DNA of 64,000 bases from Phallusia mammillata. Taxonomy: Eukaryota. Location of the stretch: the NCBI GenBank assembly GCA_965637545.1, contig OZ281494.1:2232001-2296000 (forward strand). Reading direction: 5' to 3'. The notes beneath the pieces are model-generated. The model saw only the letters and a list, made by a program, of their open reading frames with translations. It made no database searches and was not told the origin of the DNA. The position numbers and the translations under genes are program-made. Within the stretch, counting starts at the first letter, position 1. Each line of letters begins with the position of its first letter. Shown here piece by piece: positions 50-19,683 of this stretch.

Positions 50-1537
50 CCCAAGATTTGTTACACCCTCAAAACCCCGCTGGGCCGGCAAAAATCGTTG
101 CATCACGTTGCGCTTAATTGTGCTGGCGACAAGAAAACATGACCTGTTGTTGGCTCTCAAATTGGAACATAAACTAGATTTTGGCAGGTCCACTAGCAAA
201 ATAGAAACATGGTAATAGTGTTAGTGTTGCAGCTGCATAATACATTTAATAGGAAGCCATTGACTTCAACAAACCACCTTAACCGCAACTGAGTAAACCC
301 GCTTTCCCTCGCCGGTAGTTATTAATCATTACTGATCAGCTGTTGATGTTGAGACAGGATGTACGTGCAATAGCTGCTTTCTCTCATGTATCAAGCTAAG
401 GTATAAATAGTTAAAATTCTTTGGGCATACATGACTTTGATGCTGTTTAAAACACTTAGCAAGCAGCGTCACTAAAAAGTGTGCTGTCACTTACCTTCCT
501 ACTAATTCCCGGCGGCGGGCAAGTCCATATGCTAGTTTTTTTGCGCAGAAATTTATGTGATCTATGATACAATAAACGCATTTGATCTGGATTCAGGTCA
601 CATTATTCATACTTTAATTTTGTGCCGTCGCTTCTAAACCTTGCAAAATTGAAAAATAACTTTGCAAATTACTTTTGTTGACGTTTTCACACAACACAAG
701 CGTTTGCTGCCTTACCTCGGCATCTTTGCCACGAACATCAAGAACAATATTTTGTCTGGTACTCAGTTGTGCAGGAATGTAAAAAACAAACAAAAGAGTT
801 CTTTGTGACACAACGTATCTGCCAACTGTTCAATAACAGAAAATAAAACCGTATTGGAAGGGTGAACTATTTTGATTACTTGTCGCTTGGTTGCTCTACT
901 TTGGACTCTTATTAACAGCTTTCTTCTAATCGAGGCAGTTATTTGTGGAAACGCGATAAGAAGGCAGGATATTTGTGATGTCTCTTCCCAACTTTCTACC
1001 CGTATTTAGTGGGAAATTGCCGAATCTGTCATTCAGAGGTAAAACCGTGGTTGCTGTGATGTATAAAGAAAAATTCTGACCAAAAGCTTTAAACCTGTCT
1101 GCTAAACTAACAGTAGAGGAATATAATTGTGATTGTAAATGCGGTATTCAATCAGGAAAAGCCCATCTTCAAGACTAATATACTTTTTACGTGATCTAGA
1201 CAAAACTAGTGTTTTCTGAAAGAGCACACAAGACAGTTGGAAGTATAAGTAACTTGCGAACATACAGGAGCACTGATAAACCCGAGAAAAGATTAAACGC
1301 AAATTACGGGATTTTATCAGAGTTTTTCGACAAAAATCATTTCGTTGGCAATAATTGATCAATTAAACAACTTTACCTGCTATGTGTTGCAAATTGGTTA
1401 GAGTATTCTCCACAAGCTTGATTGATTTGACGGCAATAACATTTGGTCAGCGACTTCCTCCCGCTCGTGCCAAGCATTAGATGGTTTAGTATATTGTTGT
1501 GGCTCACAATCGGGACAGTTTGTAAAGTTTGTAAAGC
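50..1537. repeat. Inverted, diverged copy of the upstream spacer that precedes every LDLa-GPCR gene
   Basis: The reverse complement of 1440-1530 matches 23190-23300 and 16800-16900 (acaaactg..cccgat.gtgagccacaacaat.tactaaac.atctaatgcttggca). 280-400 matches 24090-24170 and 60-220 matches 24230-24390. Matched by eye. Confidence 0.8.
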
Positions 1538-2335
1538 GACTTCGGCTTTAACCATGACATTGATATCTGCTTATAGACTTGTATCTGTCTACAAACTATT
1601 TCTCACTATATTACTGGGGCCTAAATGGACTATTTTGGGGTGTTTTGTTACTTGGTGTGTTTCTTTGTTCATTGCCATTATTCCAATCCTTAATTTTTCC
1701 TCTGGTTAGTTTGTGACAACAATCTGGTTTCCTAATTTCGTTCACAAACGTGATTTTGTTTCTTTTGAAGCTGCAATGCTTTTGGCACAACAAATGTCAC
1801 CCACCAACAGCACCGTGTTATCATGACACGACGCTAAACGAGTCATCGACATCAACATGTCCGTGCAATTAATCAAAGGAGAGTTTGGTTACTACGCCAA
1901 AACCAGCGTGTGTTTGCCAAGACTGTTTTCTTCAAGTGGCAATTCAGCTTGGGGATACTCACTGTTTGTAATCACAGTAGATTTTGTCTTGTTTATTTTA
2001 TGGTTGTCGCTTATGTCCTCATTTATCGACGCAGCAATCGCATGGCTGAGGCAAGAAACAATGATACCAGTGCCAAAATGCAGAAACGAATATCCAGATT
2101 GCTTTTGACGGATTTTTGTTGCTGGATTCCGATTTGCATACTAAGTTATGTTTCGCTGGGTGGTGTAGTAATGTCAGATATCGTTTATGTGCTTGCAGCT
2201 GCGGTTTTGCTTCCGATCAACAGCGCCCTCAACCCGTTGCTTTATTCTTCTGTGATTGACAGCGCTTTGGAGAAATGTAAGAAAGCTGGTGTTGCTTCTG
2301 TGCGCCGGACGAATACCGAACTAGTTACTATGTAA
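1538..2335 (+). pseudogene. 5'-deleted LDLa-GPCR pseudogene (end of TM3 to C-terminus only)
   Basis: Reads TSALTMTLISAYRLVSVY...TDFCCWIPI...LPINSALNPLLYS...TELVTM*. In-frame stops at ~1707 (TAG) and ~1824 (TGG>TGA) and a frameshift near 1990. Fused directly to upstream spacer with no signal exon or ectodomain. Confidence 0.92.
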
Positions 2336-3159
2336 TCTTGTTTGCTCTATTTTTATGCGGAGAACCGTTGTTTTCGTGTATTTTGACAACAAAAAGATCT
2401 TCTGTACATAATAGGCCCATTATTTTAGGCGGATCGGAACAGTGGTATATATTAGTATCTCCCAACATTTAACAATCTATTTTTTTCTGCCTAATGCATT
2501 TTGTGTGTCTCTGATTTTTAATTTAGCGTAGGTTATGATCTTGCTCGCCGACATTTGCTTAGCTTTATTTTAATACATATCTAAATTCATAATAAACCAA
2601 AGAATGAATATATTTCCAAACAGACATGTGACAGAACCAGCTTATGATATTTGTTTTAAATACAAAACACCCCACTATTGCTATTGCCTTTTAAAACTTT
2701 CCACATTTAGATTTGGGCTTAACAGAAAGTGATGTGTTCTTTATGAAGTTTGTAAACGCAGTTGTGGGGAAAATTTGACATTGACAGTGATTTTTTGCAA
2801 CAAAATGTCAGAGAGATTAACAAAAACAATGCTTAGAATGAAAACAAAACTTCCAAACATCAGATACATATGAGGTTTGTCATAAAATGTTTAAATATTG
2901 TACATAAAGTTCAAATCATGAACTGACATTTAGATGCTTTTAAGCCTTTCAGTTTTCATAAACAGTCGGTTCCACTCCGGGACGAAAGTTGCTTGAAAAG
3001 TTGATGTAACTTGTTCGTTCGCCTTCCAGCTCATATAAGTGAGGTAAAGATATTGCTGGAACAATACGACTGAGTATTTTTATATCAGTTTGATAAATTA
3101 TTTTTATCTCTTATTTTGATGCAATACATTATACAAGACATAGCTTGTGTAAGTTCTTG

Positions 3160-6100
3160 TCAAGAGTACTTCGGTTTCCGCAATTTCGGGGCACTTTTAT
3201 TAGACTGGGCTACATAAGGTTTGCAACAGTTTAAATATTACATAAAGAAACATATTTGGAAAGTCATGGAACAAAATTGTGAAAACTATTCGAGTTGTAT
3301 GTTTTATTTCAGAATCGTTTTTTAATATGACTTAACCGGTAAACGACTTCGCTTACTTATACATTTATATTCAAGTTCGTAACTTTATCTACAAGACTAA
3401 GTCGTTTTATTTTCAAATGTAATGTTACACTTTTACTTTCCAAACATTACAACTTTTTCATGTGTTAATTTGTCAACTTAAATCAAGTCACCTGAAATGG
3501 TTTTTGGAAGCCCGGAAACCGTTCCATCTATTTCAACTGGTTGCTCTTTCGATCTGCCATAAATGTCGTTAAAAGACTGTTTTATTATTCGCACTACGTA
3601 GGTTGGTATAAAATGATAAACCAAAGAACAGTCGCTTGTTTTTGCCAACCTTTGTTTCGTGCAGCAGCAAACGAAAACAATCACCAGTAACGTCACAATC
3701 AAAATAAATCCTGCCGCACTTCCGGATATAATCCCAATTAAAGTTCCCATGGGAAGACTTCCTGCAAATGTACAACTGCATTAAACTTTTTTTCACATAT
3801 AATGAACTACTTTTTTATCATGTTGTTTAACTTCCATAGTAGACCTTACCTGATGAGCAATTGGCAGAGGAATTCGTTAACGTTGTGAAAACTATTTTGG
3901 AAGTTGCGTTTGTAGAAAAATTGCTGTTGAGTAAAACTGTTAACTGCAATCAAAACACAATATTGATTAAATATTTTAACAGCTGGAATCCACATTCTGT
4001 TAAAGAAACTAACGTAAAAGGTTTTAGGAAGGCAAAACTGCAAAATTACTGTAATGCAGGTTTAACTTAGCGTCAAGGTACTATGGACTAACAAAATACT
4101 CTTTGAAAACTCAAATTATAAAGTGAGTCTGGTTTATAGTGTTCTGAAAATTACTACTTTTTTAGTTTGTACCTGATAACTTCGCACAAATTGAAACATA
4201 TACCAGATGCAGCACACTACTTTCTTGCAACAAACCTCTGCGCTGTAGTTTGTGGAGGGTTGTAGATTTAGTATTCCGGCAGATTGTTCAGAGTACAGTG
4301 TTGTGATGCTTTTGTTGTGGGAAGTTTCAACTAAAACCTTAACAAATCACATAGGAAAATGTGAAAGAATAATTGATAAGAAAGTAGAAATAATTAATGA
4401 TAATTGATGAGAGTAATTAGCAGTGCTTCCTTAATCAGAATCTGTCAATAATAGTGTTAAACGAAACATGTGCTTGACCTTATGTAATCCGTTTACTAGC
4501 AAGCAATGTTTTTTCCCCAAAAACAGTTATAAATTGTAATATCATAAAAATACGGATAAAAATAAATTAAAACCAGAATTTTGACGCTTTGCAGAACGTA
4601 ATATTCTTTTAAAGTTACAAATAAAAACAAAACAATATTAGAATTAAATGTATGTCCTGTGAATAAAAAAAATAGATCAACTAGTGGATTTGCGTTTTTT
4701 TTTAAACACCACCTGTGGATTCAGAGAATGAATTCCGAGTAACTGATCCAGGCCAGACCAATGTATAGATGTCGTAGTTGGGTCGCATGGATTTGGCGTG
4801 GTCCAAGCTGTAACTGATAGTAAATAGCGCCAGTAACTCCACCGTGTCAGCACCGTAGTTTTCACAAACAAAAAAAAAAAGTAGAAAAGAAACAAAATTA
4901 ATTCCCACCTGAAAAGCAACTCGCAGGGAGATTCCCCAATGACGTAAACTGGATCGATGACGTAACGTTTCTAGGTGGACAGCTGTCAATCAACACCGTA
5001 ACCTGTTGGAATTAAAAACAAAGTCTAAGGAGCTTTCAGGAAACGTGCCACAATAAAGGAAGGAAGCAGTTGGCAACTTATAAACCTGAAACCGCTATGT
5101 AGGACTTAGTAGCACATGTTAAGGCGCTGCAGTGAAAATACAACTACATTTTCAGATCTTGGTTTCAGACACCCCACCTATGGTTGCTAAATTAAAGAAA
5201 AGAAGTTGCAATATTCAACTTTAAAATCAAAGTTCTACTCGATCCTTGCAAGGTTGTACTACTGTGCTAATTATACCCGGAAATAAAACACTGATTTTAG
5301 TCATCGCAAAGCCACAAACCTTTGCACTGTAGGTCACCAACGAAGTGAGGTTTAAAATATTGGCTTTGAGATCCGAATACTTTGCTTTGATGATTTGTCC
5401 GTGAGAAGTCTCTATCAAAACCTTAACAAAAACATGCTCAGCTGTGTCACATTAAATGCAATATTACGTGCTTTTACCTTCGGGTTTAGCGAGTATGCGT
5501 TGATGAGTTGAGAAAGACCAGACCACGTGATTGACGTCATGCTCGGATCACAATTGTACGACGTCACCTTTGTAGTAACTAGCTTATCAAAGAAAGAAAC
5601 CATTAGCATACAAATCTGTATGCAAATTGTAATTATGAAAACAAACTTGCTTTATACTATGAGTTTGTGGAGGAAGCAGTGGCTTACACGAAGTTTACTT
5701 AATTGAAATAAGGCCACATAAAAACTTGTCATATTTTGCAGAACATTGGGTGCAACCAGGAAGTCAAACCGGAACTGAACCTGGACCCATATGGCAAGCG
5801 GTTCGACTCTCTGGGTGCAGTATCACAAAACATACAAGTTTCGTATTTCAAAACGTCGTTGTAAAGCGTTTTGTGACTATGAGCTCAAACGAAAGTGTTC
5901 ATTTGTCGCATTGTGGGGAATCAATACTTTCGACGATGAATTCTAGAAATTAACCAACTGTGAAAACCTAGGCCCAAAACGAACTAAGCCCTGTCGGCTT
6001 GGCTGAATGTCGTATACATACTCACGTTTTATTTGGCAGACATAATTCGCGGCGTTTTCACTGCCAGTACAATTCCTGTTAGTTTGCTTCCAGCCATTCC

Positions 6101-8922
6101 CATAATGCAACGCTCTCTGTTGACACGTGGTCAAGTTAGTTGTCGGAAAATCAGCTGCTGACCCATCACTCCAAAACCATGCTTTCCGCGTTACGCTAAA
6201 CCGAGCTCCAACGAATACGGTTATATCTGTAACGGTAGTAAAATTTTCTTTGCACTTTATGATTAAAGAAAAATATACGAAATTTTTGATGACTGTACAA
6301 TGAATGATTTTGTAAAACACATGTGTTAGTAAGCCCAATGTAAATAATTGAATGCTTGACTTTTTAGTTTTACCCACCCATAACTAAAGTTAGCTACAAG
6401 TATGGTTGACCTACTACCCAGTTTTCAATTCGATACCAATAACAGATATTTTAAACAAAAAGTTCTTCGATCCGATCACAAATTATTAAATCATTTTTGT
6501 CAACAAATTCCTTGGAAAACATTTAAAGAATACTAGTCACTTTTAGACGTTGTGTGCAGGTTTACATTAACCATTTCGAAGCAGTGTGATGTCCGTTTGT
6601 AAATCACTATAGTGCTGGCCTAAACTTGACTTAATTGTGACCTCAGTGGAGGCTATGCTATATTTGACAAACGAATCGATTTACTTTCAGTTTTAAGCGT
6701 ACAATTTTATCTGCACGCTACCAAAACACCCAAAAACTTGATCGTCGTAATACTGGTGATTTTCGGCACGTCCTATGTTTTCTCAATAACGAAAAACAAA
6801 CGTTCTAACCAAGAGAATAAGTAGTGATGTACTGGCGACTAACAAAAAAGTCTGTACCAAGATTCTAGCAAAATATTGTGGCAGAAACGAGGGACCAACC
6901 CATGTTTTCCTCGTTGATATTGGCGTTTACGGCAACAGAGCCGAAGTATCGGAAGAGTACGGATACAGGGTATTGGGTATCGACGCCCGAATATCCTAAT
7001 ACACATTTTAGCAAGGAATATAGCTGAAAATCGTCTTTTAACCATAAGCATGCCTTACTGGGAACGTAGATCACTCCATCCTGTCGTTTATGCGGGTTTG
7101 CTGTGGTTTGTAGCGAGGAATAAATATCAAAACTTTGCTCGACGTTAATTGTCCTCCAAGTTTTTATGGGATTACGTGCAGCGTAAAGTGAAAACCTAAG
7201 TTTGAGTTCTACAACAAAAACAAATTGAAAGTGAAAGACAAAATGGTTTACACAAAAATGATCTATACAAAATTAATAATTATCTATATGTATCAAAGTC
7301 TTAGGCATTAGTTGTTTGAAAAGAACAATTTACGACAGGTATTTTTAATCACAAAATTTACAGAGAATCCAAGTTTGAAATAAACGATTCATGTTTTTCT
7401 ATGAACATGTTATCGTATCATTGACTTCGTATCAAGGTAAAAAGTGCCAAACTTCGAAATCGAGTTCTGAAACTTAACAAGTGCTCGGTCTTGCCTGGAT
7501 CTTTGGCATCCTCGCAATCTTTTTCAACGGTCACTTTCCATACAACAGAAGTGCCTTTTTGGCAAAAGCTAACTTTGACCAACCAACTTCCTATATCACT
7601 GCAAAAAAATGCAAATTTACTTTCAAGTGTTCTACTTATAGCAACACAACAAAAAAGGAAGCAAAAAACAGAAGGTAGCGTCGATAACGGGGACATCTAA
7701 CTATGGTCGCAAAAATCAAACTGTGTCATAACTTTGACATAAAAAAGTCTCTTTGTTGCTCACATCGTTTTGATTTAACACAATACTTTTTTTCAATTTT
7801 GGCCTTTACATTACAGTTTAATGTTGATCTCGAGACGTTAGGTATTATTTTTGGAGTTTGCCAAAAATGATAGACAAATATACTAAGGTAGTTACAACAA
7901 CCCATAAAGGCTTTGTGAAACGATGTCTTGCTTTAAAATTGGACAAATTATGTAACCATTACAAATTTCGTATTTCTATTTTCCATCGACATTGCGCAAA
8001 GGGTTTTATGTCTCAATTTCAGTTTCACCAAAATTATCGGCAGCATTGAAAGTGCTTGTATGTCTATAGATGACAATGAAAGAAAAAAGTTACGATAAAT
8101 ATCAAGAAAAACTGAACACTTCAAAATATTTTGTCACGAAAACGCTATAAAAGAGCAATACCTTCCTCGCCTGAGCTGCTGTTTTATTTAATGGTTTTGA
8201 TTCATAAAACGGACGCAAAAAATCTGCATTTAAGCAAGTATATCAACGTAAACACGTAATATCCGTACCCAACTTAATCATTGTTATAAATTAGCGAAAA
8301 TTAAAATACCAAACCTGTCAAAAAAGTCGAGATGCCATTTTGGTCGCGTGACGTTGTTTTTGATGAGCACTGAGTTTTTGTTAAAAGAAAACGCAGCAGT
8401 ACCAAACGGAAGATCGTGAATATAAAGTCTTTTCAAATCTAAATTATAGATATAACTTAACTAAAATGAAATTTTGTTAAAAATTACCAATCACAGCTGT
8501 AACCACTAACATAGAAGTTTGCATGTGCAATTGTCAAAAAATGATTCTTTTCATATGTCTGTACGAAAATATGTGGATAAACCTAAAAAAAATTCACGCT
8601 ACAAACTTTGTGTCGACAATTTCGTCAGCACGAATGTTAGAAACTGGGATGTTTGAGCATCTTTGAAATCAGCAAGTCGTCCACCCCGTGATAAGCATTC
8701 TTGTTCTGCTGTATTTGCATCAACAGTATATCTTGAAAATAAATAGACGACATCTTTCAAAGTCACCAGATTTTTGGGGCAATCTGCAAATGGCAGAAAC
8801 AATTCGCCCATGTATTATTTTCGGTCAAGAATTTACACAATGTTAGTAAATAACTTACTGGCAGTTTGGCTTCTGGCGTGGTAGAAGAGTAAAAACAGTA
8901 AAATAGTTTGAAATAGTTTCAT
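3160..8922 (-). CDS. Type I membrane protein: signal peptide, atypical C-type lectin-like domain, two FN3-like repeats, TM, short basic tail (~545 aa, 15 exons)
   Basis: Hand-built exons: 8859-8922, 8607-8783, 8315-8438, 7495-7598, 7059-7208, 6026-6226, 5478-5578, 5320-5421, 4909-5002, 4713-4813, 4236-4337, 3850-3943, 3650-3761, 3492-3553, 3160-3209. All phases match; total 1638 nt = 546 codons. Signal MKLFQTILLFLLFYHARSQTA; CTL motifs AEQECLSRGGRLADF, FVGARF..WFWSDGS, ANYVCQ; FN3-like ILNLQPSTNYSAELTV and ILNLTSLVTYSAKVTV; TM IISGSAAGFILIVTLLVIVFVCCC. One donor is GC. Confidence 0.8.
6710..6999 (+). pseudogene. Possible decayed type II membrane FkbM-like methyltransferase fragment, antisense in an intron
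   Basis: Hydrophobic NLIVVILVIFGTSYVFSI (~6735-6790), then after a frameshift 6811-6999 reads ...HVFLVDIGVYGNRAEVSEEYGYRVLGIDARIS*, resembling a SAM-binding motif I region. Family call from motif memory only. Confidence 0.3.
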
Positions 8923-10586
8923 GGCAAGAATCAGTTCAAGACAAAAAAATAATCTTTTACATCAAAAAACATAGTTTAGTATTAAAAGCAAATTGTGATG
9001 GGTAAATTTTTTGTAATATACTGTTGTAACAAACGACACTTTTACAGGAAAGCAAGCATATTCCGACAGGCTGACATATTTTAGCTTTAGCACACCTGGT
9101 AAATTAACTCAGCTCAAATTATATGCAATGTACATTAGATTCGCCTTCAAGAAATGGCTATTGATTTTACCCTAAGATGTAGATGAAAACAAATACACTG
9201 CCTTATCGGAATACATGTGTTCTTAACTATCACTAAGCAATAAAACTGTAAAGACGTCATACATCTTGTTTGCTTTTTTAATTCCCTACAAACGAGTCAG
9301 ATATTAGCATAACATTAGATGTTTTATTTGCTTTCAAAACGTTAAGATTAACTGCAGCAGTCTTGTTACGATTTTAATAACCAATGCCAAAAAACAACAA
9401 AAACTTAGCCTTACTTATCCGTCCTCTAAAATGTACTACATGTTTTCTCATGCTACGTGATAATTAGATGCTTATTACTTCCCGTGACGAAGTCTTAGAT
9501 ATCGCTTTGTTGTGCGTCATGCTTGAAAGTTCTTGCAAGACAAGAGATATGCAAATTACTTGTTCGTGCACCTTCTCATAGACTGATCACTCAACCACGG
9601 TCTGGTAGATGCGTTTATGTTATCAAACAAGCAGTGTGCTGTGTGTGATGAAACAGATGCAAGTTTTTTGAGATTGACAAAAAATTAGGGAAATAATAGC
9701 TGGTCTCATCAAGGTAGATCACCAAATACAAAACCTTTTTTCAAACAAACAGGGGATATAAAAGAGAAAAATTATTTTGGTTCGAAAGGCTGCACAATTG
9801 CGTCACTTAGTGTTTTGACTTTCCCGCACATACCCTGTGTTTAGTACTAATTAGGCCCTGTAATTGTGACTTATTTTTTATGGTTGTCTTTTAGGTTATT
9901 AAGAATGCTACTTGTTGCAGGTATGTAACCCTGTATTCGTTGCTTTAAGTCTTAGATCTATATTCCTGGACTGAGGTAAAAATGAAACATCAATCAATCG
10001 TTTGTTTGTCGCGTTTACAAGAAGAGAAGTAACACACAAAAAAGAAAGTTGTGTGACAAGTTTTAAAACGCCGAGTGTTTAATCGGCACTAACGGTGTGT
10101 TCTAAGAAACTGCAGGTGTGCTGTTACCGGGGTAATCGATGTGTATTCGCTTAACAACTTGCCACATAGGACGCACAACACGTTAGGTGTGTTGATTTAA
10201 GTCTAGGTGATCCGTTGTAAGTCTAACAGAAATACGAAAGGTTTTGTGGTGGCGCCATCTGACTCATCTAAAGCCACACACCCCTTCGTGTTGCAACTGC
10301 CTTAGTGTTGTTGTCTAGAAATATTTTTTTTAACCAACAAAAAATATCCCAACCTATCGAGATTGAAAATAAACTGCAACGTAGAAAAAAAATGAAGAAA
10401 AGAAACGTATAAAAGCAAAAAAAAGTGTGCAAAAATGAAACTTTTTTGTGTCAAAGTTTCTACCCAGCTAGATTTTTGCAACCATAAGTAGATGTTCTCG
10501 TTATGGACGAGACACTTTGTTTGTTTCTTACTCCTTTGTCGTTTTGCTATGAATGCAACACTATAGAAAGTTTGCTTTGTTTGCAG

Positions 10587-11553
10587 TGATACAGAGCGTT
10601 GGATGGTGAAAGTCTCGTTATGTCAGAAAGGCACTTCTTTGGTGTGGAAAGTGACCGTTGAAAAAGATTGCGACAACACAACAGATCCAGGCATGCTTTT
10701 TTGTACTTTGAAACCAAGTTTATTAACTTGGTTTTGAAATTTAGCAGCTTTTACCGCGACGCGAAATCAACGATACCATAACATGTATGTGGAAAAAACT
10801 TGCACCAATATTGGGTTATTATCTCAAATATCTTTTTTCTTATGCTGTAAATTATCTTTAAATTGTTATGTTTAAAAAATAATTAGGGAAGCAATAATTT
10901 GAAGAACTACACATCGATCATTTTTGTGTAAAACATTCTGTCTTTCACTTTCATTTTGTTGTAGAACTCAAACTTAGGTTTTCACTTTACGCCGCACGTA
11001 ATCCCATAAAAACTTGGAGGACAATTAACGTTGAGCAAAGTTTTGATATTTATTCGTCGCTACAAACCACAACAAACCCGCATAAACGACAGGATGGAAC
11101 TTTCTCTGTTCCCGGTAAGCAAGGATTTTACATATCTTTTTGACTTTGCTAAAAATTGTATTAGAAATTTGGAACGCATTGGGAATAATTTTGAGCCTAC
11201 AAATCCCAAACAGCTGCGTGATGTAGTCTGGCGAATCTAAACATTGCCATTCGTATAACAGGCTTCACTGATGAAAACTCGTAGGCCAAAAAGAGTGTGC
11301 TACTTGTATCTAGGGTTGGCCCGATCATACTTTGTCGATATCCGCATGAAAAGAAGGTTACATGTATATTTATTGGTACATAAAATAAGGAAAATGCAAA
11401 GAAACTAACTTTAATACAATTACAGATATCAACTTATTTGTTGGAGCTCGATTTATTGAGGCACGCAAAGCATGGTTTTGGAGTGATGGGTCAGCAGCTA
11501 ATTTTCCTACAAACAACTTGACCACGTGTCAACAGAGAGCGTTGAACTATGGG
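10587..11553 (+). pseudogene. Inverted, internally deleted paralogue of the CTL/FN3 gene (exons 4-6 only)
   Basis: Exons 10587-10690 (DTERWMVKVSLCQKGTSLVWKVTVEKDC), 10965-11114 (ELKLRFSLYAARNPIKTW...) and 11426-~11553 (INLFVGARF..WFWSDGSAANFP..TTCQQRAL) mirror 7495-7598, 7059-7208 and 6026-6226. The sequence then jumps to the inverse of ~3460. A terminal-exon relic at ~11860-11910 has lost its acceptor AG. Confidence 0.8.
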
Positions 11554-12199
11554 TCTGATAGATTAACACATGAATAAGTTGTATTGAATTATGCAAAAGT
11601 GTAACATTACATTTGAAAATAAAACGACTTAGTCTTGTAGATAAAGTTACGAACTTGAATATAAATGTATAAGTAAGCGAAGTCGTTTACCAGTTGAGTG
11701 AGATTGAAAAAGGATTCTGAAATAAAACATACAACTCGAAAAGTTAATTATAATTTTGTTCCATGACTTTCCAAATGTATTTCTCGAATTAATAAAATGT
11801 AAATTGTTACTGTCAATGAATATGCAAACCTTATTTAACGCTTTTGACAGTTCAATTTTTGCCCAGTCTATCAAATTGTGCTCCGAAATTGTAAAACTAA
11901 AGTACATTTGACAAAAACCTATACAACCTATGCTCTTTATAATGGCATTAAATCAAGAGATATAATTAATTCATAAAATTGAGATAAAAACTACTCAATC
12001 GTATTGTTTCATCAATCATTTTACCTCACTTATATGAGTTGGAAGGCGAACGAACAAGTTGTGTCAACTTTTCAAGCAACTTTCGTCCAGGAGTGGAACC
12101 GACTGTTTATGAATACTGACATGCTTAAAAGCATCTAAATGCTGGTCTATTATTTGATCTTTATGTACAATATTTAAAATTTATGACAAACCTCATATG

Positions 12200-12663
12200 C
12201 ATAGGCGCCGAGTTTTGCAAAAATGCAAGGTGGCGGACTTGAAATATGACGTCATTTTATGTGACGTCACTAATGCGTGCACCACATGAGCTCAAACTCA
12301 AAGCCCAACAAACTTCCTATAGGATGCAACGTTTGTCAAAATCATAAAAAAGAAATTTTTGAAATAGTATTTATTCGGAACACTTTGCTGTGTAACGTTT
12401 ATCATTGGTTTAGCAGCGTTTTAAAAAATGTTTGTCATGTTGTTTTTGCTTTATATCACCTACAATAACCATTTATTACAGCACAATCGAATTTTACACA
12501 ATAATGGCCATACATTCACTGTCAACAATTGTGTGTTTGACCTCATAAACAAGGCACTAATCGAAACAGGTTCGTACGATACCGCTACAAACAAACCAAA
12601 ATATCCACGGTGGCCGCCACTGTGCTTTACAAACCCAAGGTGGCGGCCTACTCGGCGTCTATG
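12200..12663. mobile_element. hAT-type MITE (family 1)
   Basis: TIRs CATAGGCGCCGAG / CTCGGCGTCTATG, perfect 8-bp TSD CTCATATG. Empty site with a single CTCATATG in the inverted paralogous arm at ~2865-2875. Confidence 0.9.
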
Positions 12664-13197
12664 CTCATATGTAACTGATATTTGGAAGTTTTGTTTTCAT
12701 TCTAAGCATTGTTTTTGTTAATCTCTCTGACATTTTGTTGCAAAAAATCACTGTCAATGTTTCTTTTGTCTAATTTGCCACAAAACTGCGTTCACAAACA
12801 TCAAACCAACTTCTACTTAAGCATAAATCTCAATAAGGAAAGCTCAAAAAGGCAATAGCAATAGTCGGGTACAATGTATTTAAAACAAATATCAAAAGCT
12901 ACTTCTGTCACGTGTCTGCTTAGAAATGTATTAATCTTTCGATTTATTATGAGTGAGATATGCATCAAAAAGAAACAAGAATATCGGCGAACAAGATCAT
13001 CTATGCCAATTTACAAACGAAAGATACTTATAATGCACAATGCAGAAAGAAAATAGTATGTTAAATGTTGGGGGATTGTAATATATACCACTGTACCGAT
13101 CCGCATAAAACAATGGGCCTATTATGTGCGGAATATCTTTTTGTTGTCAAAATACACAAAAAACAACGGTCTCCGCATAAAAGTAAAGCAAACGAGA

Positions 13198-16100
13198 TTA
13201 CATAGTAACGAGTTCGGTATTCGTCCGGCGCACAGAAGCAACACCAGCTTTCTTACATTTCTCCAAAGCGCGGTCAATCACAGATGAATAAAGCAACGGG
13301 TTGAGGGCGCTGTTGATTGGAAGCAAAACCGCAGCTGCAAGCACATATACGATGTCCGACAAAACTACACCACCAAGCGACAAAAAACTAAGCATGCAAA
13401 TTGGAATCCAACAACAGAAATCGGTCAGAAGCAATCTAGATATTCGTTTTTGCATTTTGGCGCTCGTATCATTGCTTTTTGCCTCGGTCATGCGATTGCT
13501 GCGACGATAAATAAGAATATAAGCGACTACCATGAAAATAAACATGACAAAATCGACTGTGATGATAAACAGTGAGTATCCCCAAGCTGCATGGCTTTCT
13601 GAAGCAAAGAGCCTTGGCAAACACACGCTGGTTTTGGCGTAGTAACCAAACTCTCCCTTGATGGATTGCCCTGACATGTTAATGTCGATGACTTGTTTAG
13701 CGTCGTGCCATGATAACACGGTGCTGTTGGTGGGTGACATACGTTGTGCCAAAAGCATTGCAGCCTCAAAAGAAACAAAATCACGTTTGTGAACGAAATT
13801 GGGAAACCAGATTGTTGTTACAAAGTAACCAGATGCAAAATCAATTGTGGGAACGATGGCAATGACCAAAGCAACACACCAAGTAACGAAACACCCCAAT
13901 ATAATCCATTTAGGTCCCAGTGACATAGTAAAGAATGGGTTCCACACAGACACCAGTCGGTAGACTGATATCAGTGCCATGGTTAAAGCCGAAGTTTGAG
14001 ATGAAACAACACACAGTGCACCTAGGATTGAACATTGTGTGCTTGAACGCCATTCTGAATCAAAATAACAATAACTCCCGGAGAACTGGACACTTTTGAC
14101 TGCAACAGCAAGTAAATAGATTCCCATTAACATGTCGGAAACTGATAGGTTAACAATGAATATTTGAGTGCTTTTATTTACACGATTGTCGGTATTCCAG
14201 TTTAGATATGTCTTTTTTAGAGTGGTTGCCGCCACTATGAAATTCCCAATCAATGCAAGGATACCCATAAACCATATAAACGCGTTCAAAATCGGGTTGG
14301 CAATCATTTCCTTCTGATTGGAGAAGACAGTGTTACGAGAGCTGACATGTGGACATTCGTCACTGCCGTCTGAGCAGTCTTTGATTCCGTCTTCTTTGTC
14401 AGCAATGGGCACTGATAGCGGATTCCCAGTAAGACAATAAAACCTCGTGTCTTTACAACGATCCTTTGCCTCATCCGATTTATCGTCACAATCGTAGTTT
14501 CCATCGCAAACTTTCATGACGTCAATGCTCGACAAATCTCCATTTTTACAAATATAGCGTTTGGGACAAAGTGATTCGTTGTAGGAGTTGCCTGGAGTTC
14601 CATCACATGCCCAGTATTGTGCTGCATCTGACATAAATTTGGTGTCATTGCAGAATGTTGGTGGATATTGGCAATTATGGCACTCATCAGTAGCACTTAA
14701 ACATTCAGGTCTTCCATCGCATGCTACACCTAATGTATCCCTTTTGGCGCATATTATAGCATCAATTTGTGGATAACAATAGTTCGTGTTTAGCCAGTCC
14801 AAGCAGACCACAGATTGGTTGCACAGCACAGAATCTATCGGAAGGCAATCTGTTTGGTTGTAGCAGTGCATATGACCTGGTGGACAAGTTGACTGAGAAT
14901 CGCCAAGCACAGCTTTGCACACCGTCTGATTCTCGCATAAGCATTCATCTGACAGGTCGTAGCAATCAATCACGCCGTCGCACACCTGATTCTTTGAGAT
15001 AACGAGTCTCTTGTCCAGGCAAAGGAAGCATCGGAATTCTCCGTTGACGAAACACAGATCAGATTTGTCAGCGCACTGGGCGTCTTGATCGTAGAGATTG
15101 ATTTGTGGCAAGCTGCATGGAAATGTTAACCAATATCCAAGACATTTGAAACTCGGTTTCGCATGATTGTGGTAGCCACTTGGTGTTATAAATGGACAAA
15201 AAGAAACCAACGCGATTTGATAGTTATTGTTAAGGTCTTGATAAAAGACAGGTGATGATAAAGGAGGCCTGTCCTGTGGTCGGCATTGGGGACTGTTGCA
15301 AATCCAGTAATTATCAGTACATACTTTATCTTTGTGTCTTTCACACGGTCTGTGATGCTGAATACAACGTGAAGATTTGTTTACTTGGTACTTCAAATAT
15401 CTCTCCAACGATTTTTTACTGGTGCAGTTAACAAAAAACTGTGTGCAGCTTAAACCAAAAGTATTTATATAAAAATCGCAAGGTTCATCGGTTTGATCCA
15501 TGCAGTTCGGTGTACCATCGGCCACTGTTGTGTTAGGTATGCATTGCCCAGTAGTCGGACAGATCTGATCACCATAGATGCATCCGCACATTACTTGATC
15601 ACCACTGTATGTGCAATTGGTTTCGTCGCTGCTGTCATCGCAGTCAAACTTCCCGTTGCATTTTAAAGATAAAGAGATGCACTGTTTAGACTTGCACTCA
15701 AATTGATCTTCCCAGCAAGGACAGTTGGCTTCATCGCTGTAATCTTTGCAATCATCTACCCTGTCACATACGTTCGAGCTTGGCAGACACCCACGCACAC
15801 CAACACATGCAGAAATCTCGTAACATGCGCATTGAAACTCATTAACTGGGCAAGTGCAATTAATTTCGTCTGTTCCGTCCAAACAGTTGTAGATGCCATC
15901 ACATATTTGTGTCTTTTCATAACATCCCAACCCATCCGTGCAATTACTGTCTCTTGGAAAACAACCGCATTGGTATTGGTTTGCATTGCAAGTCGCAGTT
16001 ACATTATTGTCTTCGCATCTCCCGACTGGCGCACACTGAGTTGCATTAAATGTAGTTGAAATGTTGTCAGGTATTGTTGCTGGGCAACCACACACGAACT

Positions 16101-16481
16101 CTCCGTAGTAGCAAGTTTGCAACCAATGCCGACATTCCTCTGTAAAAACAGTTTGGCACTTAACAGTCATGGGGGTGCAAAAAACTTAAACCAGTTATTT
16201 TTTTTAAAGGGAGTCGTTAACTACACTTCTAATAAACGAACAAGTAAACCGTAGTGGTGTAAAATTGAACTGCAATAAACAAAATCATATTTCGTTTGGT
16301 AAAAATCTGTTACACCTGCTGTGTTGCGTTTTATGACCATACCGTATCATACTCACCGTCCTGTATTTCTTAAAAGTTTAACAGGAACAATCAAAATTTA
16401 CTTACCATAAGTGACAAGCCCGTCCGATGGAAAGTTGTTGATCAACAGAACAAAAGATAACAATAGCACAATCCTTACCAT
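13198..16481 (-). CDS. LDLa-repeat class A GPCR without LRRs, type A (1005 aa, 2 exons)
   Basis: Exon 1 16406-16481 (MVRIVLLLSFVLLINNFPSDGLVTY, donor gtaagt). Exon 2 13198-16139 (acceptor ttttacag, phase 1). About 8-11 canonical or degenerate LDLa modules (e.g. CWEDQFECKSKQC...CNGKFDCDDSSDETNC). RXFP/GRL101-like 7TM (NLSVSDMLMGIYL, TDFCCWIP, LPINSALNPLLY). Confidence 0.93.
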
Positions 16482-18836
16482 ATTTAACCTGCTAAATTAT
16501 TCATTAATCTAAACAAAAAAGAAGGCACATATTGTCTGCTCAAGCTACCTATCGATTCACACCGTTTACAAAACCTTTTACACTGTTTTGGGGATAATTG
16601 CAAAGTATCGCTGTTGATGGTGAACAATAACTAAAGTTCTCAGTTAATTAACAATTTTGTTACTTTTTACCTTGTGTGATTGCTATTTACAACAAAAGAA
16701 AAACAACATGAATAGATTGATACGGTAACAAACTTTAGACTTTTTTTATTTTATGTTATTCAACAAAAACTTCACTCTAGCTCTAAAATGTTAACGTTGT
16801 ACAAACTGCCGCAATCGCGAGTCACAAAAATATACTAAACCATCTAATGCTTGACATAAGCGGAGGGAAGTCGTTGATCAAACGTCATTGCCCTCACATC
16901 AATCAAGCTTTACTGGTTTCAAATTATTCAGGCATAACCTGGGGAGAATACTTTAACTAATCTGCAACGCATAGCAAGTAAGGTTACTTATATGATTAAA
17001 TAATGCCCACAAAATAATTTTTATCGAAAATACAGAATAGCGTAATTCGCGTTTAATTTTTTCTCGGGTTCATAAGTGCTCATAACTGTTCACAAATAAG
17101 TTATACTTCCAACTGTCTTGTCTGACGTTTTCCGAAACGCTAGTTTTGTCCAGATCTAAAATAATTAAATCAGCATTCAAATTGTGCTGTCCCAGATTAA
17201 AAACCGCATTTGCAATTACAATTATTTTTGACTACTGTTAGTTTTCTACTGATTTAAAGATGACACCTTAAACAAGCTTCCACAAATAGGACACCTAAAT
17301 TATATTAGTCTAAATTTCCTTTCTACATCACAGCAACCGCAGTTGGCTCAAAATGACAGATTAGACGATTTCCTGCCCCATATGGGTGCTAAGTGCGGAA
17401 GGGATATTACACTCTTCCTGCCCTATCTTTTTGACCAGTTGATTTGCTCCCATTGGTTAAGTGAAACTTGTTTATACGAGACCACCATTGGGCAACCAAT
17501 TGACAATTAATGATAATAATTCACCCTTACATTATATTGTTTTTGTGTAACTGAATTGTTTGCCGATACGTCAGGCGTCCAAAACAAATCTTTTGTTATC
17601 CTGCACAACTGAGTGACCAGACAAATCATCGTTGTTTTTGTTTGTTGCGAAGGTGTCAAGGTAAGGCTTTTCTGCCACAACCAAGACAAATCCGTACAAA
17701 GGTTAACATCAGCGCACCTTGTGAGTGACACTGCAATGCAAAGTGCTTTTAAACCATTTATTTCAAGAAGCGTTTGACACATAAGAGGAAGCCATTACAC
17801 ATGCCTTTACATCAACAGCTGATCAGCAATGATAAATCATCATCGGTGAGAAAGTCGGGTTTAGGTGGTGTATTAAGATAATATGACTTCCTATTTAAGT
17901 AGTGTGTATGGCTGCAATCTTAAAAAGGAATCCTGAATGTTTTTTTATACTAAGAGTGTTTGAACTGAACAGTATCTGATCTTTCAACAGGCAGCATGGT
18001 CATCGACGATCACCGTTTATTTACAAGTTTTACAAATTTAAAAATTGTTTTCTACGTGTTTATCCGTTGATACTGATATGCCTAAAACTGTTCACGGAAT
18101 TTTTAGACATGAACAACTGCCACCATAAAGGGCCAGTGACCGGCTAAAACGTAAAGTATACTTATTTGTGACAAACCCATTCTTATATAACCAACAACAG
18201 TGTCGACTTTCTACTTTTCTAAACTAACAAATTATCGTAGAAGGTAATTTGCAAATCGTAATTGTGTTCAGGGTTATGAACCTAATCAATAACATGCCAA
18301 ACACCTTCTGCATTATATAGCTTTTTTATACAACAAAAGCACAGCTGTGTACAACAGCTTCCAGTACGTCATATAATTCACACCGCTCTTGCTCAATCTG
18401 CGTCAAGTTCATCGTGACCAAACCATCAACCACTTTACCGACCAAACCGTTGGGAATTTCCCTTCGCTGGTTGGAATTGTTTCTCAAGGTTATGGCCAAA
18501 TTACTCGGGTTGGAACATTTTGGCACATAGTCTCTACTGCATGGTGTCTTCATATCGAGGACTAAACGCCGTAAGTTTGCTTAAGAACTATGACATATCA
18601 ACATACGCGAGTAAATTTACATCTGAATTCTTTGGAAATCTCAACGTATCAACGTCTACCTAATCAGGTACAAGAGCGCGAATCGCGTTTCAGCAAACTT
18701 AGGGTTTTTCTTTACATTTCAGGCCAAGTTTGGAATGTTCCTTTACATTTTTAAATCCCACTGAGCAGACAACAGCTCGTTGCGCACATTCTTTTTCTTT
18801 ATTTTAACCCATGACCCCGCGGGGCAGGCAACGGAT

Positions 18837-19084
18837 CAGTGGTTCCCAACCAGGGCCCATGGCCCCCCAGGGGGTCCACGAGCTATGTTCCGGGGGGCCA
18901 CGGGTGTAGATTTACAAGAAACACCCACTAAAAGTCATTTTCACTTATTCCCGAATTTATTCGACTATTTCACACACTATTTGTTGATAGTGAGGTTATC
19001 ACGCTCATTACTCTATTAGACCTGTTTAAGGCCAAAATTAATACTTTAAGGGGGCCATCGTCCACGAAAGGTTGGGAACCACTG
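18837..19084. mobile_element. hAT (Charlie-like) MITE (family 2)
   Basis: TIRs CAGTGGTTCCCAACC / GGTTGGGAACCACTG. TSD CAACGGAT/CAACAGAT (7/8). Empty site ggCAACAGATacttg in type-B spacers (e.g. ~25262). Confidence 0.9.
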
Positions 19085-19683
19085 CAACAGATCATTGCAA
19101 AGCGTTGAGTCTAACTCATGGAAAAATATCACGTTCTATTAGTGTTCAACAATTTGGGATCAAATAGTTTTAATTAGTGATTCAACAGTGTCGAGCCGAT
19201 GCTAAACCCATTCAATTTTCCTTTGTGTATTTTAAAATGAATTTTCCTTTAAAATACTTGCGTTTCCGGTAACAAACTGAATTACAACCATATCACTTGC
19301 TGCAAAAGCACACATCAAAAGGCAATAAGGCAAACAGTAGGCTAAGATAGTCAGTTACTCTGAGTTTAAATTGCTAAGACTGGTTTTAAATTTATATGTT
19401 TGTTTCCTGGCAAACCCTTTATTAGTAATATTCTTTTAGAAACCTAAAAAAGTAGGTTTTGTTGTTCCTTGGCAAACTTTTGTTTTGATTATCCAAGGTA
19501 TGTATTGATTTTGAACAAATCAAACCTGTACAAAAATGTAGCAAGAACATCAGTTTCAAGCACATCACCTAAAAGCAAAAAGAAAAACGTTTACACAAAA
19601 AGAATTAAGGGCAAAATAGAAAGGGTGTATTCAATATATCGGTAACCTTTTGACACTAGTACGACACAAGAAATTCACGATGG

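What the first reader, a model, noticed from the sequence alone, without database searches (positions are those of the whole stretch)
50..16481. Old inverted duplication of a lectin-receptor/GPCR gene pair with reciprocal gene loss
Seen: the left arm (spacer, GPCR(+), 3' flank, lectin gene(-)) mirrors the right arm (lectin exons(+), 3' flank, GPCR(-), spacer). Matches are 2335-3460 with ~11570-13200, 6100-6226 with 11426-11553, and 7050-7690 with 10500-11130. The left arm keeps the intact lectin gene and a broken GPCR; the right arm keeps the intact GPCR and a broken lectin gene. Inference: complementary degeneration after a foldback duplication restored one working copy of each gene, and the right-arm GPCR may have seeded the array.
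Basis: partly seen in the sequence, partly recalled or inferred. Interest (0 to 1): 0.7.

Follow-up and report, generated by a model that had tools for sequence, protein, structure and literature searches.

The report
Old mirror duplication around lectin gene

Summary
The inverted homology is real and far beyond chance. Five collinear blocks match, at 68-88% identity and with blastn E-values from 1e-44 to 0. They are 709-1524/17667-16800, 1539-2874/13995-12664, 2864-3475/12202-11556, 6099-6258/11553-11391 and 7054-7899/11119-10289. They surround a 2.4-kb single-copy centre. The left GPCR (L0) lacks 2.8 kb: the signal exon and 715 codons. The right lectin copy lacks 2.6 kb and never shows exons 1-2. 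The "gene pair" framing is too small. The mirror continues off-window to a second GPCR unit (L1/R2), and to an outer spacer block that pairs with 64.3-73.7 kb on the right. Two unit types, separated by a 15-nt deletion and by their own 3' flanks, are mirrored on both sides. A tandem pair therefore predated the mirror event, and R1 did not seed the array. Neutral divergence is similar across classes: intron 0.40, spacers 0.33-0.36, GPCR dS 0.35. This fits one old event. Lower values come from short, arm-specific, perfect tracts of 80 and 97 nt, most simply arm-to-arm gene conversion. The right lectin copy may never have been complete. No RNA evidence was found. This is a new member of a known kind, of low to moderate interest.

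The parts
709..1524 (.). Left-arm remnant of spacer A, the region upstream of the inner GPCR unit. It mirrors 16800-17667.
   Evidence: blastn gives 68% over 897 columns, E 2e-91. K2P is 0.33.
1525..1538 (.). Junction of the 2.8-kb deletion in the left GPCR. About 14 nt of filler repeat the motif GTTTGTAAAG.
   Evidence: Pairwise alignments to both sides of R1. Spacer homology ends at 1524 (= 16800) and ORF homology starts at 1539/1540 (= 13995).
1539..2335 (+). L0, a pseudogene fragment of an LDLa-repeat GPCR. It holds the last ~265 codons (TM3-TM7 and tail). The signal exon, promoter-proximal region and 715 codons are missing.
   Evidence: 88% identical to R1 13198-13995. Pfam 7tm_1 matches profile positions 153-260. 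tblastn shows 2 stops and a frame change near 1907-1997. The fragment is mosaic: its first 260 nt are 95-98% identical to L1 and its last 130 nt are 98% identical to R1.
2336..3477 (.). Left intergenic flank between the convergent stop codons of L0 and the lectin gene. It probably holds both 3' UTRs. It mirrors 13197-12665 plus 12201-11556.
   Evidence: K2P is 0.14-0.19. Perfect runs of 80 nt (2778-2857) and 97 nt (3338-3434) were reached by 0 of 5000 column shuffles. In the whole genome this flank occurs only in L, R, P, and in part in R5 and a chromosome-4 copy.
3478..8922 (-). C-type-lectin-like receptor gene, apparently intact, with 8 predicted exons. E1 8922-8859 is the signal peptide. 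E2 8783-8607 and E3 6226-6026 form the CTLD. E4 5578-5478 with E5 5421-~5320, and E6 4813-4713 with E7 4337-~4200, form two internal repeats. E8 ~3761-3478 holds the TM helix and tail.
   Evidence: 168 GT-AG models of 388-401 aa contain all motifs without a stop. Exon sequences were read directly. E2 gives Pfam Lectin_C E 0.1, below cut-off. PDB phmmer hits are CTLDs only, at the correct halves. ESM Atlas nearest clusters are Lectin_C, at 0.94 and 0.91. No RNA contigs were found. Boundaries of E5-E8 are uncertain.
7054..7899 (.). Block inside lectin intron 2 that is mirrored at 11119-10289. It includes a 178-nt island (7054-7231) at 92% identity.
   Evidence: blastn gives 73%, E 1e-139. K2P is 0.08 for the island and 0.40 for the rest. 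The genome has no other copy.
7900..10288 (.). Single-copy centre of the mirror. It holds the 5' part of lectin intron 2, exons 2 and 1, and about 1.37 kb upstream of the lectin ATG.
   Evidence: No inverted or direct self-match. tblastn finds no second copy of exon 1 or exon 2.
10289..11119 (.). Right-arm copy of the lectin intron-2 block.
11391..11553 (+). Right-arm fragment of lectin exon 3 with its upstream intron edge. It holds 42 codons at 81% aa identity and is cut mid-exon. Both C-terminal CTLD cysteines are lost.
   Evidence: blastn gives 84%, E 4e-44. tblastn covers codons 1-42.
11554..11556 (.). Junction of a 2.6-kb deletion in the right arm. It joins mid-exon 3 (left 6099) to 1-3 nt past the lectin stop codon (left 3478-3480).
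   Evidence: Alignment. The same joined form appears in unitigs of DNA run X1. The paralogous copy P keeps about 45-50 nt of the lectin last exon that the right arm lacks.
11556..13197 (.). Right intergenic flank. It is interrupted at 12202-12664 by an interspersed repeat of about 450 bp.
   Evidence: The repeat has at least 75 genomic matches at up to 95% identity. It is absent from both the left arm and P.
13198..16481 (-). R1, an open two-exon LDLa-repeat GPCR. Exon 1 is 16481-16406 (signal peptide) and exon 2 is 16139-13198 (980 codons).
   Evidence: Pfam gives Ldl_recept_a E 8e-25 and 7tm_1 E 1e-18. The conserved signal exon, donor and acceptor were aligned across units. The best named homologues are all ascidian.
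16800..19171 (.). Right spacer A between R1 and R2. Blocks 16800-17667, 18705-18829 and 19086-19171 mirror left 1524-709, -77..-202 and -222..-307.
   Evidence: K2P is 0.33-0.36.
19684..22607 (-). R2, an open b-type GPCR. Its 3' part and 3' flank mirror L1, which lies just left of the window at genome C1:2228545-2231450.
   Evidence: L1/R2 C-terminal K2P is 0.105 and dS is 0.257. A 15-nt deletion and the 3' flank are shared. L1 switches to R7-like sequence in its 5' part.

Best explanation
The stretch is the inner part of an old, array-scale inverted segmental duplication (a palindrome with a 2.4-kb unique centre) in an ascidian chromosome.

Inferred ancestral segment: the 3' two-thirds of a C-type-lectin-like receptor gene, starting within intron 2; the shared tail-to-tail intergenic flank; an a-type LDLa-repeat GPCR; spacer A; a b-type GPCR; and spacer C.

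The event: this segment was copied in inverted orientation about 1.4 kb upstream of the lectin gene. The left arm is contiguous with lectin exons 1-2 and its promoter, so positionally the left arm is the parent and the right arm is the copy.

Later changes, each visible in the sequence:
1. A clean 2.8-kb deletion removed the signal exon and 715 codons of the left inner GPCR (L0). L1 and L2 were also disabled.
2. A 2.6-kb deletion removed the rest of the lectin coding sequence from the right copy.
3. An interspersed repeat inserted into the right flank.
4. The right b-unit was split by tandem and segmental duplications into R2...R7. These include a 7-kb tandem repeat (93.5%) and a 13.2-kb copy (98.6%).
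5. Short gene-conversion tracts were exchanged between the arms and between neighbouring units. These lower the divergence locally and make the copies mosaic.

What is shown: the homology, the junctions, the disabled and open frames, the mirrored unit types, and the non-random identity tracts.

What is inferred: the order of events, which arm is parental, and gene conversion as the cause of the tracts.

The structure itself has no demonstrated function.
For: - Collinear inverted blocks with E-values from 1e-44 to 0.
- The mirror extends to L1/R2 and to spacer A.
- An outer inverted block pairs left -332..-6607 with right 64340-71212, and left -20852..-22261 with right 71405-73660. K2P there is 0.14-0.24.
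- Type-specific characters are mirrored. The a-type 3' end is nearly identical in L0, R1 and R5. A 15-nt deletion with its own flank is shared by L1, L2, R2 and R6.
- L1 is R2-like at its 3' end and R7-like at its 5' end and in its upstream spacer. This is expected if one ancestral right unit was split by later duplications.
- Four neutral classes agree: intron 0.40, spacers 0.33 and 0.36, and GPCR dS 0.354.
- Low-divergence parts are discrete. Perfect runs of 97 and 80 nt lie in a flank that is otherwise 79% matched, and 0 of 5000 shuffles reach them. At these places the third copy P is only 79-91% identical.
- Deletion junctions were read directly. The right-arm junction was seen independently in DNA unitigs at single-copy depth.
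- P retains about 45-50 nt of the lectin last exon next to the flank. The flank was therefore attached to the lectin 3' end before the right-arm deletion.
- No second exon 1 or 2 is present in the centre.
Against: - Divergence between arms is heterogeneous (K2P 0.08-0.40). Three-way comparison with the paralogous copy P gives conflicting groupings by segment: the flank gives L+R, 3045-3320 gives R+P, and spacer A gives L+P. No single tree dates the events, so repeated partial duplications cannot be strictly excluded.
- The mirrored b-type characters could in principle have been spread by gene conversion rather than inherited.
- dS between the arms (0.35) equals dS between array types (0.32-0.37). 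Divergence alone therefore does not order the mirror event and the array diversification.
- The perfect tracts could be conserved 3'-UTR or regulatory elements rather than conversion tracts.
- No genome of a related species could be examined and no RNA data cover the locus.
- "Intact" lectin and GPCR genes are open reading frames only.
Confidence: 0.72

Rival explanations
1. A single lectin/GPCR pair was duplicated by fold-back. Complementary degeneration then left one working copy of each gene, and the surviving right-arm GPCR (R1) later seeded the tandem array.
For: The innermost units do show complementary damage: L0 is truncated and the right lectin is truncated. The right array has clearly kept growing, with a 98.6% 13.2-kb copy and a 93.5% 7-kb repeat.
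Against: Mirror homology continues through spacer A into a second unit and then into an outer spacer block. The two unit types, with a derived 15-nt deletion and distinct 3' flanks, are mirrored. A + strand array of four units lies on the left as well. The right lectin copy starts in intron 2 and no mirrored exon 1 or 2 exists.
Confidence: 0.12
2. The blocks come from several independent duplication or transposition events of different ages that happen to lie in inverted order. There was no single mirror duplication.
For: K2P ranges from 0.08 to 0.40 between blocks. A third copy of flank + GPCR + spacer A exists 1.28 Mb away, and it groups differently with L or R depending on the segment. This shows that pieces of the module have moved or recombined repeatedly.
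Against: At least seven blocks keep strict order and orientation over more than 11 kb per arm. The blocks expected to be neutral agree at 0.33-0.40, as does dS at 0.35. The low values are confined to short perfect tracts embedded in about 79% background. That is the signature of conversion, not of younger insertions with their own boundaries.
Confidence: 0.1
3. Assembly artefact. A chimeric fold-back read or a haplotype mis-join created an apparent palindrome.
For: Palindromes at array edges are a known failure mode of long-read assembly. Only one assembly and its probable source reads were available.
Against: The arms differ by 12-30%. Each has a private 2.6-2.8-kb deletion, and the right arm has a private repeat insertion. 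Unitigs of a DNA run cover the left arm at single-copy depth of about 100-110, and separately carry the right-arm junction.
Confidence: 0.02

Closest known systems
Large genomic palindromes / inverted segmental duplications with arm-to-arm gene conversion (for example the ampliconic palindromes of primate sex chromosomes; from general knowledge, not tested here)
   Same: There are two inverted arms around a short unique spacer. The arms carry multi-copy gene-family members. Discrete tracts of much higher arm-to-arm identity than the background are present.
   Different: The arms here are old and strongly diverged (68-88%, against more than 99.9% in the classic cases). They are asymmetric because of kilobase deletions, a repeat insertion and one-sided array expansion. 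Conversion is patchy rather than homogenising. One breakpoint lies inside a gene, so one gene copy is 5'-truncated.
Ciona LDLRR-GPCR lineage-specific expansion (Kamesh et al. 2008, PMC2396169)
   Same: The GPCR units have N-terminal LDL-A repeats joined to a rhodopsin-type 7TM core with no detectable LRR. The best named homologues are ascidian proteins of that architecture. The family is expanded, with at least 74 matches in this genome.
   Different: That paper describes the family's content and domain organisation in Ciona. The passages I read did not mention an array or palindrome organisation. The copies here are only 33-41% identical to Ciona, Phallusia and Clavelina proteins, so they are a separate, species- or lineage-specific expansion.
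Duplicate-gene fates: pseudogenisation / reciprocal loss after segmental duplication
   Same: One arm keeps an open lectin gene and a dead inner GPCR. The other arm keeps an open GPCR and a dead lectin fragment.
   Different: Reciprocal loss presumes two initially complete duplicates of each gene. The lectin copy shows no sign of ever having had exons 1-2. The GPCR is a member of a many-copy array, so loss of L0 is not complementary in any functional sense.

Membership tests
Inverted segmental duplication (palindrome with spacer) | Two arms with collinear homology in opposite orientation, beyond chance | tested here: met
   There are 5 in-window blocks and 2 off-window blocks in strict inverted order, with E-values from 1e-44 to 0.
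Inverted segmental duplication (palindrome with spacer) | Single-copy spacer between the arms | tested here: met
   7900-10288 has no self-match. Homology fades at about 7900-7990 and 10210-10289.
Inverted segmental duplication (palindrome with spacer) | One event, shown by uniform neutral divergence along the arms | tested here: inconclusive
   Neutral classes agree at 0.33-0.40. The flank, the exon-3 block and a 178-nt island are at 0.08-0.19, and comparison with copy P is mosaic.
Arm-to-arm gene conversion | Discrete tracts of near-identity, non-random given the background, and specific to the two arms | tested here: met
   Perfect runs of 97 and 80 nt were reached by 0 of 5000 shuffles. 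Copy P is only 79-91% identical there. Selection on conserved elements is not excluded.
LDLRR-GPCR (ascidian LDL-A-repeat, relaxin-receptor-like GPCRs; Kamesh 2008) | N-terminal LDL-A repeats | tested here: met
   Pfam Ldl_recept_a gives E 8e-25 with 3 scoring stretches in R1.
LDLRR-GPCR (ascidian LDL-A-repeat, relaxin-receptor-like GPCRs; Kamesh 2008) | Rhodopsin-family 7TM core | tested here: met
   Pfam 7tm_1 gives E 1e-18. Named homologues include 'GRL101-like' GPCRs. A specific relaxin-receptor affinity of the TM core was not tested by phylogeny here.
LDLRR-GPCR (ascidian LDL-A-repeat, relaxin-receptor-like GPCRs; Kamesh 2008) | No leucine-rich repeats | tested here: met
   No LRR family appears at E<=0.01 in the Pfam scan of R1.
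LDLRR-GPCR (ascidian LDL-A-repeat, relaxin-receptor-like GPCRs; Kamesh 2008) | Ascidian lineage | tested here: met
   All the best named hits are from Phallusia, Ciona, Clavelina or Styela, at 33-41% identity.
C-type lectin-like domain (Pfam Lectin_C) | Significant match to the family profile | tested here: inconclusive
   The search was exon by exon only. E2 gives Lectin_C E 0.1, 13.8 bits against a cut-off of 22.6. PDB phmmer gives only CTLD chains (KLRD1, dectin-1, CLEC9A, CLEC2D, NKG2D and a yolk-sac IgY receptor precursor), E 0.07-1, with E2 on the N half and E3 on the C half. ESM Atlas nearest clusters are Lectin_C at 0.94 and 0.91. The joined model was not searched.
C-type lectin-like domain (Pfam Lectin_C) | Conserved cysteine framework and the W-x-W-x-DGS core | tested here: met
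   Read from the exon translations. The cysteines are at CPKN, QEC, TTC, RNC and YVC. The motif is AWFWSDGS.
C-type lectin-like domain (Pfam Lectin_C) | Ca2+/carbohydrate-binding motifs (EPN or QPD, and WND) | tested here: not met
   Neither motif is present in exon 3. Sugar binding is therefore not predicted, and 'lectin' should be read as 'CTLD receptor'.
Reciprocal (complementary) gene loss after duplication | Both duplicates of each gene were initially complete | tested here: inconclusive
   The GPCR side is plausible. L0 keeps spacer A and its 3' end, and pairwise dN/dS is 0.20, as between open copies. The lectin side is doubtful. The right copy starts in intron 2 and no mirrored exon 1 or 2 exists. 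A later central deletion cannot be excluded.

The most novel reading that the evidence does not exclude
The inverted, partly dead left-hand GPCR copies (L0-L2) and the mirrored arms may act as a standing reservoir for gene conversion. This would shuffle ectodomain and C-terminal segments among the open copies of this GPCR family, whose Ciona counterparts are haemocyte-expressed, next to a CTLD receptor gene. The palindrome would then be a diversity-generating architecture of an ascidian innate-immune-type receptor cluster rather than a passive relic. The mosaic identity patterns among units and the perfect arm-specific tracts are compatible with this but do not show it. Any somatic version of the idea is much less likely.
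Probability: 0.08. Interest if true: 0.75.

Novelty: new member of a known kind. Interest (0 to 1): 0.27.

Why it matters
The locus gives a worked example of how a lineage-specific receptor family grows in a tunicate genome: a tandem pair, then a mirror duplication, then one-sided array expansion. Kilobase deletions and patchy gene conversion blur the ages along the way. In practice it warns that Ks-based dating inside this cluster is unreliable. It also warns that annotation should treat L0, L1, L2, R5 and the right-arm lectin fragment as pseudogenes, and the GPCRs as two-exon genes with an upstream signal-peptide exon. No new kind of system is involved.

Tried and rejected
1. RNA evidence for the lectin gene model. 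Three RNA-guess runs laid on 3300-9200 gave no contigs. Expression and splice sites therefore remain unverified.

This was not tested.

3. Dating the order of the copies (L, R and the paralogous P at C1:3.513 Mb) by three-way site patterns. The segments disagree, so this was abandoned as a dating tool.

4. Automatic splice-model search with crude scores. It gave a wrong 3' half that missed the TM exon. It was replaced by a motif-constrained enumeration. The boundaries of E5-E8 are still ambiguous.

5. Rfam scan of 1-20000 for an RNA gene that could explain the conserved islands. It found nothing.

6. My first reading that all left-hand GPCRs are dead was wrong. With the two-exon model, the stop in L3 is intronic and L3 is open for 974 codons.

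7. The idea that R1 is intronless with its ATG at 16170 was rejected. That stretch is intron. The conserved signal exon starts at 16481.

8. The joined spliced lectin model was not sent to any search tool.

Full report
**Setting**

The window is G000:C1:2232001-2296000 of a 240-Mb assembly. The large ORFs in it encode proteins with LDL-A repeats and a rhodopsin-type 7TM core and no LRR (Pfam). The best named homologues are all ascidian (Phallusia, Ciona, Clavelina, Styela), at only 33-41% identity. The organism is therefore an ascidian whose own proteins are not in that database. The genes belong to the LDLRR-GPCR type described as a lineage-specific expansion in Ciona (PMC2396169). In Ciona, most EST matches for the family came from blood cells and haemocytes.

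**Observation**

The inverted, collinear blocks are:

| Left | Right | Identity | E-value |
|---|---|---|---|
| 709-1524 | 17667-16800 | 68% | 2e-91 |
| 1539-2874 | 13995-12664 | 85% | 0 |
| 2864-3475 | 12202-11556 | 80% | 1e-171 |
| 6099-6258 | 11553-11391 | 84% | 4e-44 |
| 7054-7899 | 11119-10289 | 73% | 1e-139 |

- Between the arms, 7900-10288 is single copy.
- The gap in the right flank at 12202-12664 is an interspersed repeat of about 450 bp. It has at least 75 genomic matches at up to 95% identity. It is absent from the left arm and from a third copy of the flank.
- The arms differ by 12-30% and carry private indels.
- Unitigs of a public DNA run cover the left arm at single-copy depth. 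They separately carry the right-arm joined form, seen as joints 3434->6099 and 6185->7075.
- An assembly artefact is therefore very unlikely.

**Genes**

*GPCR units*
- Each GPCR unit has two exons, not one.
- A conserved signal-peptide exon starts at ATG 16481 in R1. Its peptide is MVRIVLLLSFVLLINNFPSDGLVTY and its donor is TATG|GTAAGT.
- It is spliced to a conserved acceptor, TTTTTACAG|, at 16139.
- The ATG at 16170 that heads the 990-aa ORF is intronic, and that N-terminus has no signal peptide.

*Lectin gene (- strand)*

| Exon | Coordinates | Content |
|---|---|---|
| E1 | 8922-8859 | signal peptide (MKLFQTILLFLLFYHARS) |
| E2 | 8783-8607 | N half of the CTLD |
| E3 | 6226-6026 | C half of the CTLD |
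| E4 + E5 | 5578-5478, 5421-~5320 | first internal repeat |
| E6 + E7 | 4813-4713, 4337-~4200 | second internal repeat |
| E8 | ~3761-3478 | TM helix and about 60-aa tail |

- The two internal repeats are 50-56% identical to each other.
- 168 GT-AG-compatible models of 388-401 aa contain all these motifs without a stop.
- The CTLD assignment rests on several weak but concordant exon-level results:
  - Pfam Lectin_C gives E 0.1, below cut-off.
  - PDB phmmer hits are only CTLD chains, with E2 on the N half and E3 on the C half.
  - The nearest ESM Atlas clusters are Lectin_C, at 0.94 and 0.91.
- The EPN/QPD and WND sugar-binding motifs are absent, so it is better called a CTLD receptor than a lectin.
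- The joined spliced model was deliberately not searched.
- E2 and E3 together already make a compact CTLD. I therefore see no need for the "three-exon cassette" that another first-stage note placed between them.

**Damage in the inner units**

- On the left, spacer homology ends at 1524. About 14 nt of filler follow, and ORF homology resumes at 1539/1540 (= 13995). This is a clean 2.8-kb deletion. It removed the promoter-proximal region, the signal exon and 715 of the 980 exon-2 codons.
- The remaining 797 nt of L0 have two stops and a frame change.
- On the right, lectin exon-3 homology stops mid-exon at 11553 (= left 6099). It is joined at 11556 to sequence 1-3 nt beyond the lectin stop codon (left 3478-3480).
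- The right fragment keeps 42 codons and lacks the last two CTLD cysteines.
- A third copy of the module (P, at C1:3.513 Mb) keeps about 45-50 nt of the lectin last exon next to the flank. This shows that the flank was once attached to the lectin 3' end in the lineage that gave rise to the right arm or to its ancestor. The right-arm gap is therefore a deletion.
- By contrast, the right copy begins inside intron 2, and tblastn finds no mirrored exon 1 or 2 in the centre. There is no evidence that the right lectin copy was ever complete. A later central deletion cannot be excluded.

**The larger picture**

I fetched the flanks from the same assembly.

*Left of the window there is a + strand GPCR array:*
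- L1 lies at window coordinates -3455..-555 and has premature stops at codons 656 and 769.
- L2 lies at -9910..-7380. It is N-terminally truncated and frameshifted.
- L3 lies at -17418..-14497 and is open for 974 codons.

*On the right there is a - strand array:*
- R1, R2, R3, R4, R6 and R7 are open.
- R5 is a frameshifted 98.6% copy of R1.

*The mirror does not stop at L0/R1:*
- The L1-L0 spacer pairs block by block with the R1-R2 spacer (-307..-222/19171-19086, -202..-77/18829-18705, 709-1524/17667-16800).
- The 3' part of L1 pairs best with R2 (K2P 0.105).
- The 5' part of L1 and its upstream spacer pair best with R7 and its upstream spacer (-4870..-332/68853-64340, 76-86%).
- The outer inverted collinearity continues: -5988..-4995/70808-69835, -6607..-6216/71212-70818, and -20852..-22261/71405-73660.
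- This is the pattern expected if one ancestral right-hand unit, the mirror of L1, was split by the later duplications that produced R2...R7. Those duplications are visible as a 7-kb tandem repeat (19447-30741 vs 26461-37756, 93.5%) and a 13.2-kb copy (12919-26173 vs 50760-64000, 98.6%).

**Did the array or the mirror come first?**

Unit-to-unit homology ends at the same place in both arms, 35 nt before the stop codon (2300 on the left and 13233 on the right). The two unit types differ in derived characters that are mirrored:
- L0, R1 and R5 share a nearly identical a-type 3' end.
- L1, L2, R2 and R6 share a 15-nt deletion and their own 3' flank.

The simplest reading is that a tandem a-b pair existed before the mirror duplication. 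The suggestion that R1 seeded the array is therefore not supported. Gene conversion could in principle have spread these characters, so I hold this at moderate confidence.

**Divergence**

K2P between the arms, by block:

| Block | K2P |
|---|---|
| Intron block 7232-7899 | 0.40 |
| Spacer 709-1524 | 0.33 |
| Spacer -307..-77 | 0.36 |
| GPCR C-terminus | 0.13 |
| Intergenic flank | 0.14-0.19 |
| Exon-3 block | 0.16 |
| 178-nt island 7054-7231 | 0.08 |

- Nei-Gojobori dS over the 266 shared codons is 0.354 for L0-R1. This equals R1 against R2, R3, R4 and R7 (0.32-0.37). It is higher than L1-R2 (0.257) and R1-P1 (0.214). Pairwise dN/dS is about 0.20 throughout.
- All classes expected to be neutral therefore agree at about 0.33-0.40, which fits one old event.
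- The low values come from discrete tracts. The flank aligns at 79% overall but contains perfect runs of 97 nt (3338-3434) and 80 nt (2778-2857). None of 5000 column shuffles reached this. At these places copy P is only 79-91% identical to either arm.
- L0 is itself mosaic. Its first 260 nt are 95-98% identical to its neighbour L1, and its last 130 nt are 98% identical to R1.
- I read this as patchy gene conversion between arms and between neighbours. Conserved UTR elements remain an alternative for the flank tracts.
- Three-way comparison of L, R and P gives different groupings in different segments. Sequence divergence therefore cannot order the events.

**Direction**

The left arm is contiguous with lectin exons 1-2 and the upstream region. 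The right lectin sequence starts abruptly within intron 2. Positionally, the right arm is therefore the inverted copy, placed about 1.37 kb upstream of the lectin ATG. I cannot tell whether the event was a fold-back or a replication template switch. The breakpoints are too old to show microhomology.

**Verdict**

- It is too narrow and partly wrong: the event was at array scale rather than a single gene pair; the array predates the mirror; the lectin copy was probably incomplete from the start; and many other GPCR copies remain.
- This is an ordinary product of segmental duplication, deletion and gene conversion in an expanding receptor family. It is a new instance of a known kind.

**Limits**

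- No RNA data cover the locus.
- No related eukaryotic genome could be searched, so cross-species synteny was not tested.
- The boundaries of exons 5-8 are uncertain.

Noticed in passing
window 16406-16481, 22860-22935, 29880-29953 (- strand): Each LDLa-GPCR unit has a conserved upstream signal-peptide exon (MVR[IR]VLLLSFVLLIN...) spliced to a conserved acceptor, TTTTTACAG|. The genes are two-exon. The ATG at 16170 that heads the 990-aa ORF is intronic.
   Followed up: yes
window 41038-43053 (- strand): An adhesion-type GPCR (Pfam GPS E 6e-8 and 7tm_2 E 2e-14) sits in the 12-kb non-array stretch between units R4 and R5.
   Followed up: partly
window 12919-26173 and 50760-64000: A recent 13.2-kb direct segmental duplication (98.6%) copied R1 + spacer A + R2. 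The R1 copy (R5, 51041-53981) has a frameshift near codon 747 and a premature stop.
   Followed up: partly
window 19447-30741 vs 26461-37756: A 7.0-kb tandem repeat at 93.5% identity produced R3 and R4. Their ectodomain-coding parts are almost identical (dS 0.005) although their C-terminal parts differ more (dS 0.08). This is another sign of mosaic exchange.
   Followed up: partly
window 12202-12664: An interspersed repeat of about 450 bp with at least 75 matches across all large contigs at up to 95% identity (SINE- or MITE-sized). It inserted into the right arm only.
   Followed up: partly
window 5664-5860: A very high-copy repeat lies inside a lectin intron. Summed unitig depth is about 22,900 against about 100 for the neighbouring sequence in DNA run X1.
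   Followed up: no
window 7054-7231 and 10942-11119: A 178-nt island at 92% identity, with two perfect runs of 38-39 nt, lies inside an otherwise 69%-identical intron block. It has no Rfam match and no other genomic copy. Whether it is a conversion tract or a functional element is undecided.
   Followed up: partly
G000:C1:3493000-3529000 (loci L013, L011, L006, L012): A dispersed third copy of the module lies here. It holds the flank, an open a-type GPCR (P1), spacer A and the C-terminal fragment of a second GPCR. It retains about 45-50 nt of the lectin last exon. A distant CTLD paralogue with the same E2 / long intron / E3 / E4 layout lies about 17 kb away on the opposite strand, facing it.
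   Followed up: partly
G000:C1 about 0.04-1.8 Mb and other contigs: Dozens of weak DNA matches (67-74%) to lectin exon 3 indicate a large family of related CTLD genes on the same chromosome.
   Followed up: no
G000:C1:2214583-2217504 (window -17418..-14497): L3, the outermost left-hand GPCR examined, is open for 974 codons and has an intact signal exon. The stop reported by the six-frame search lies in its intron.
   Followed up: yes
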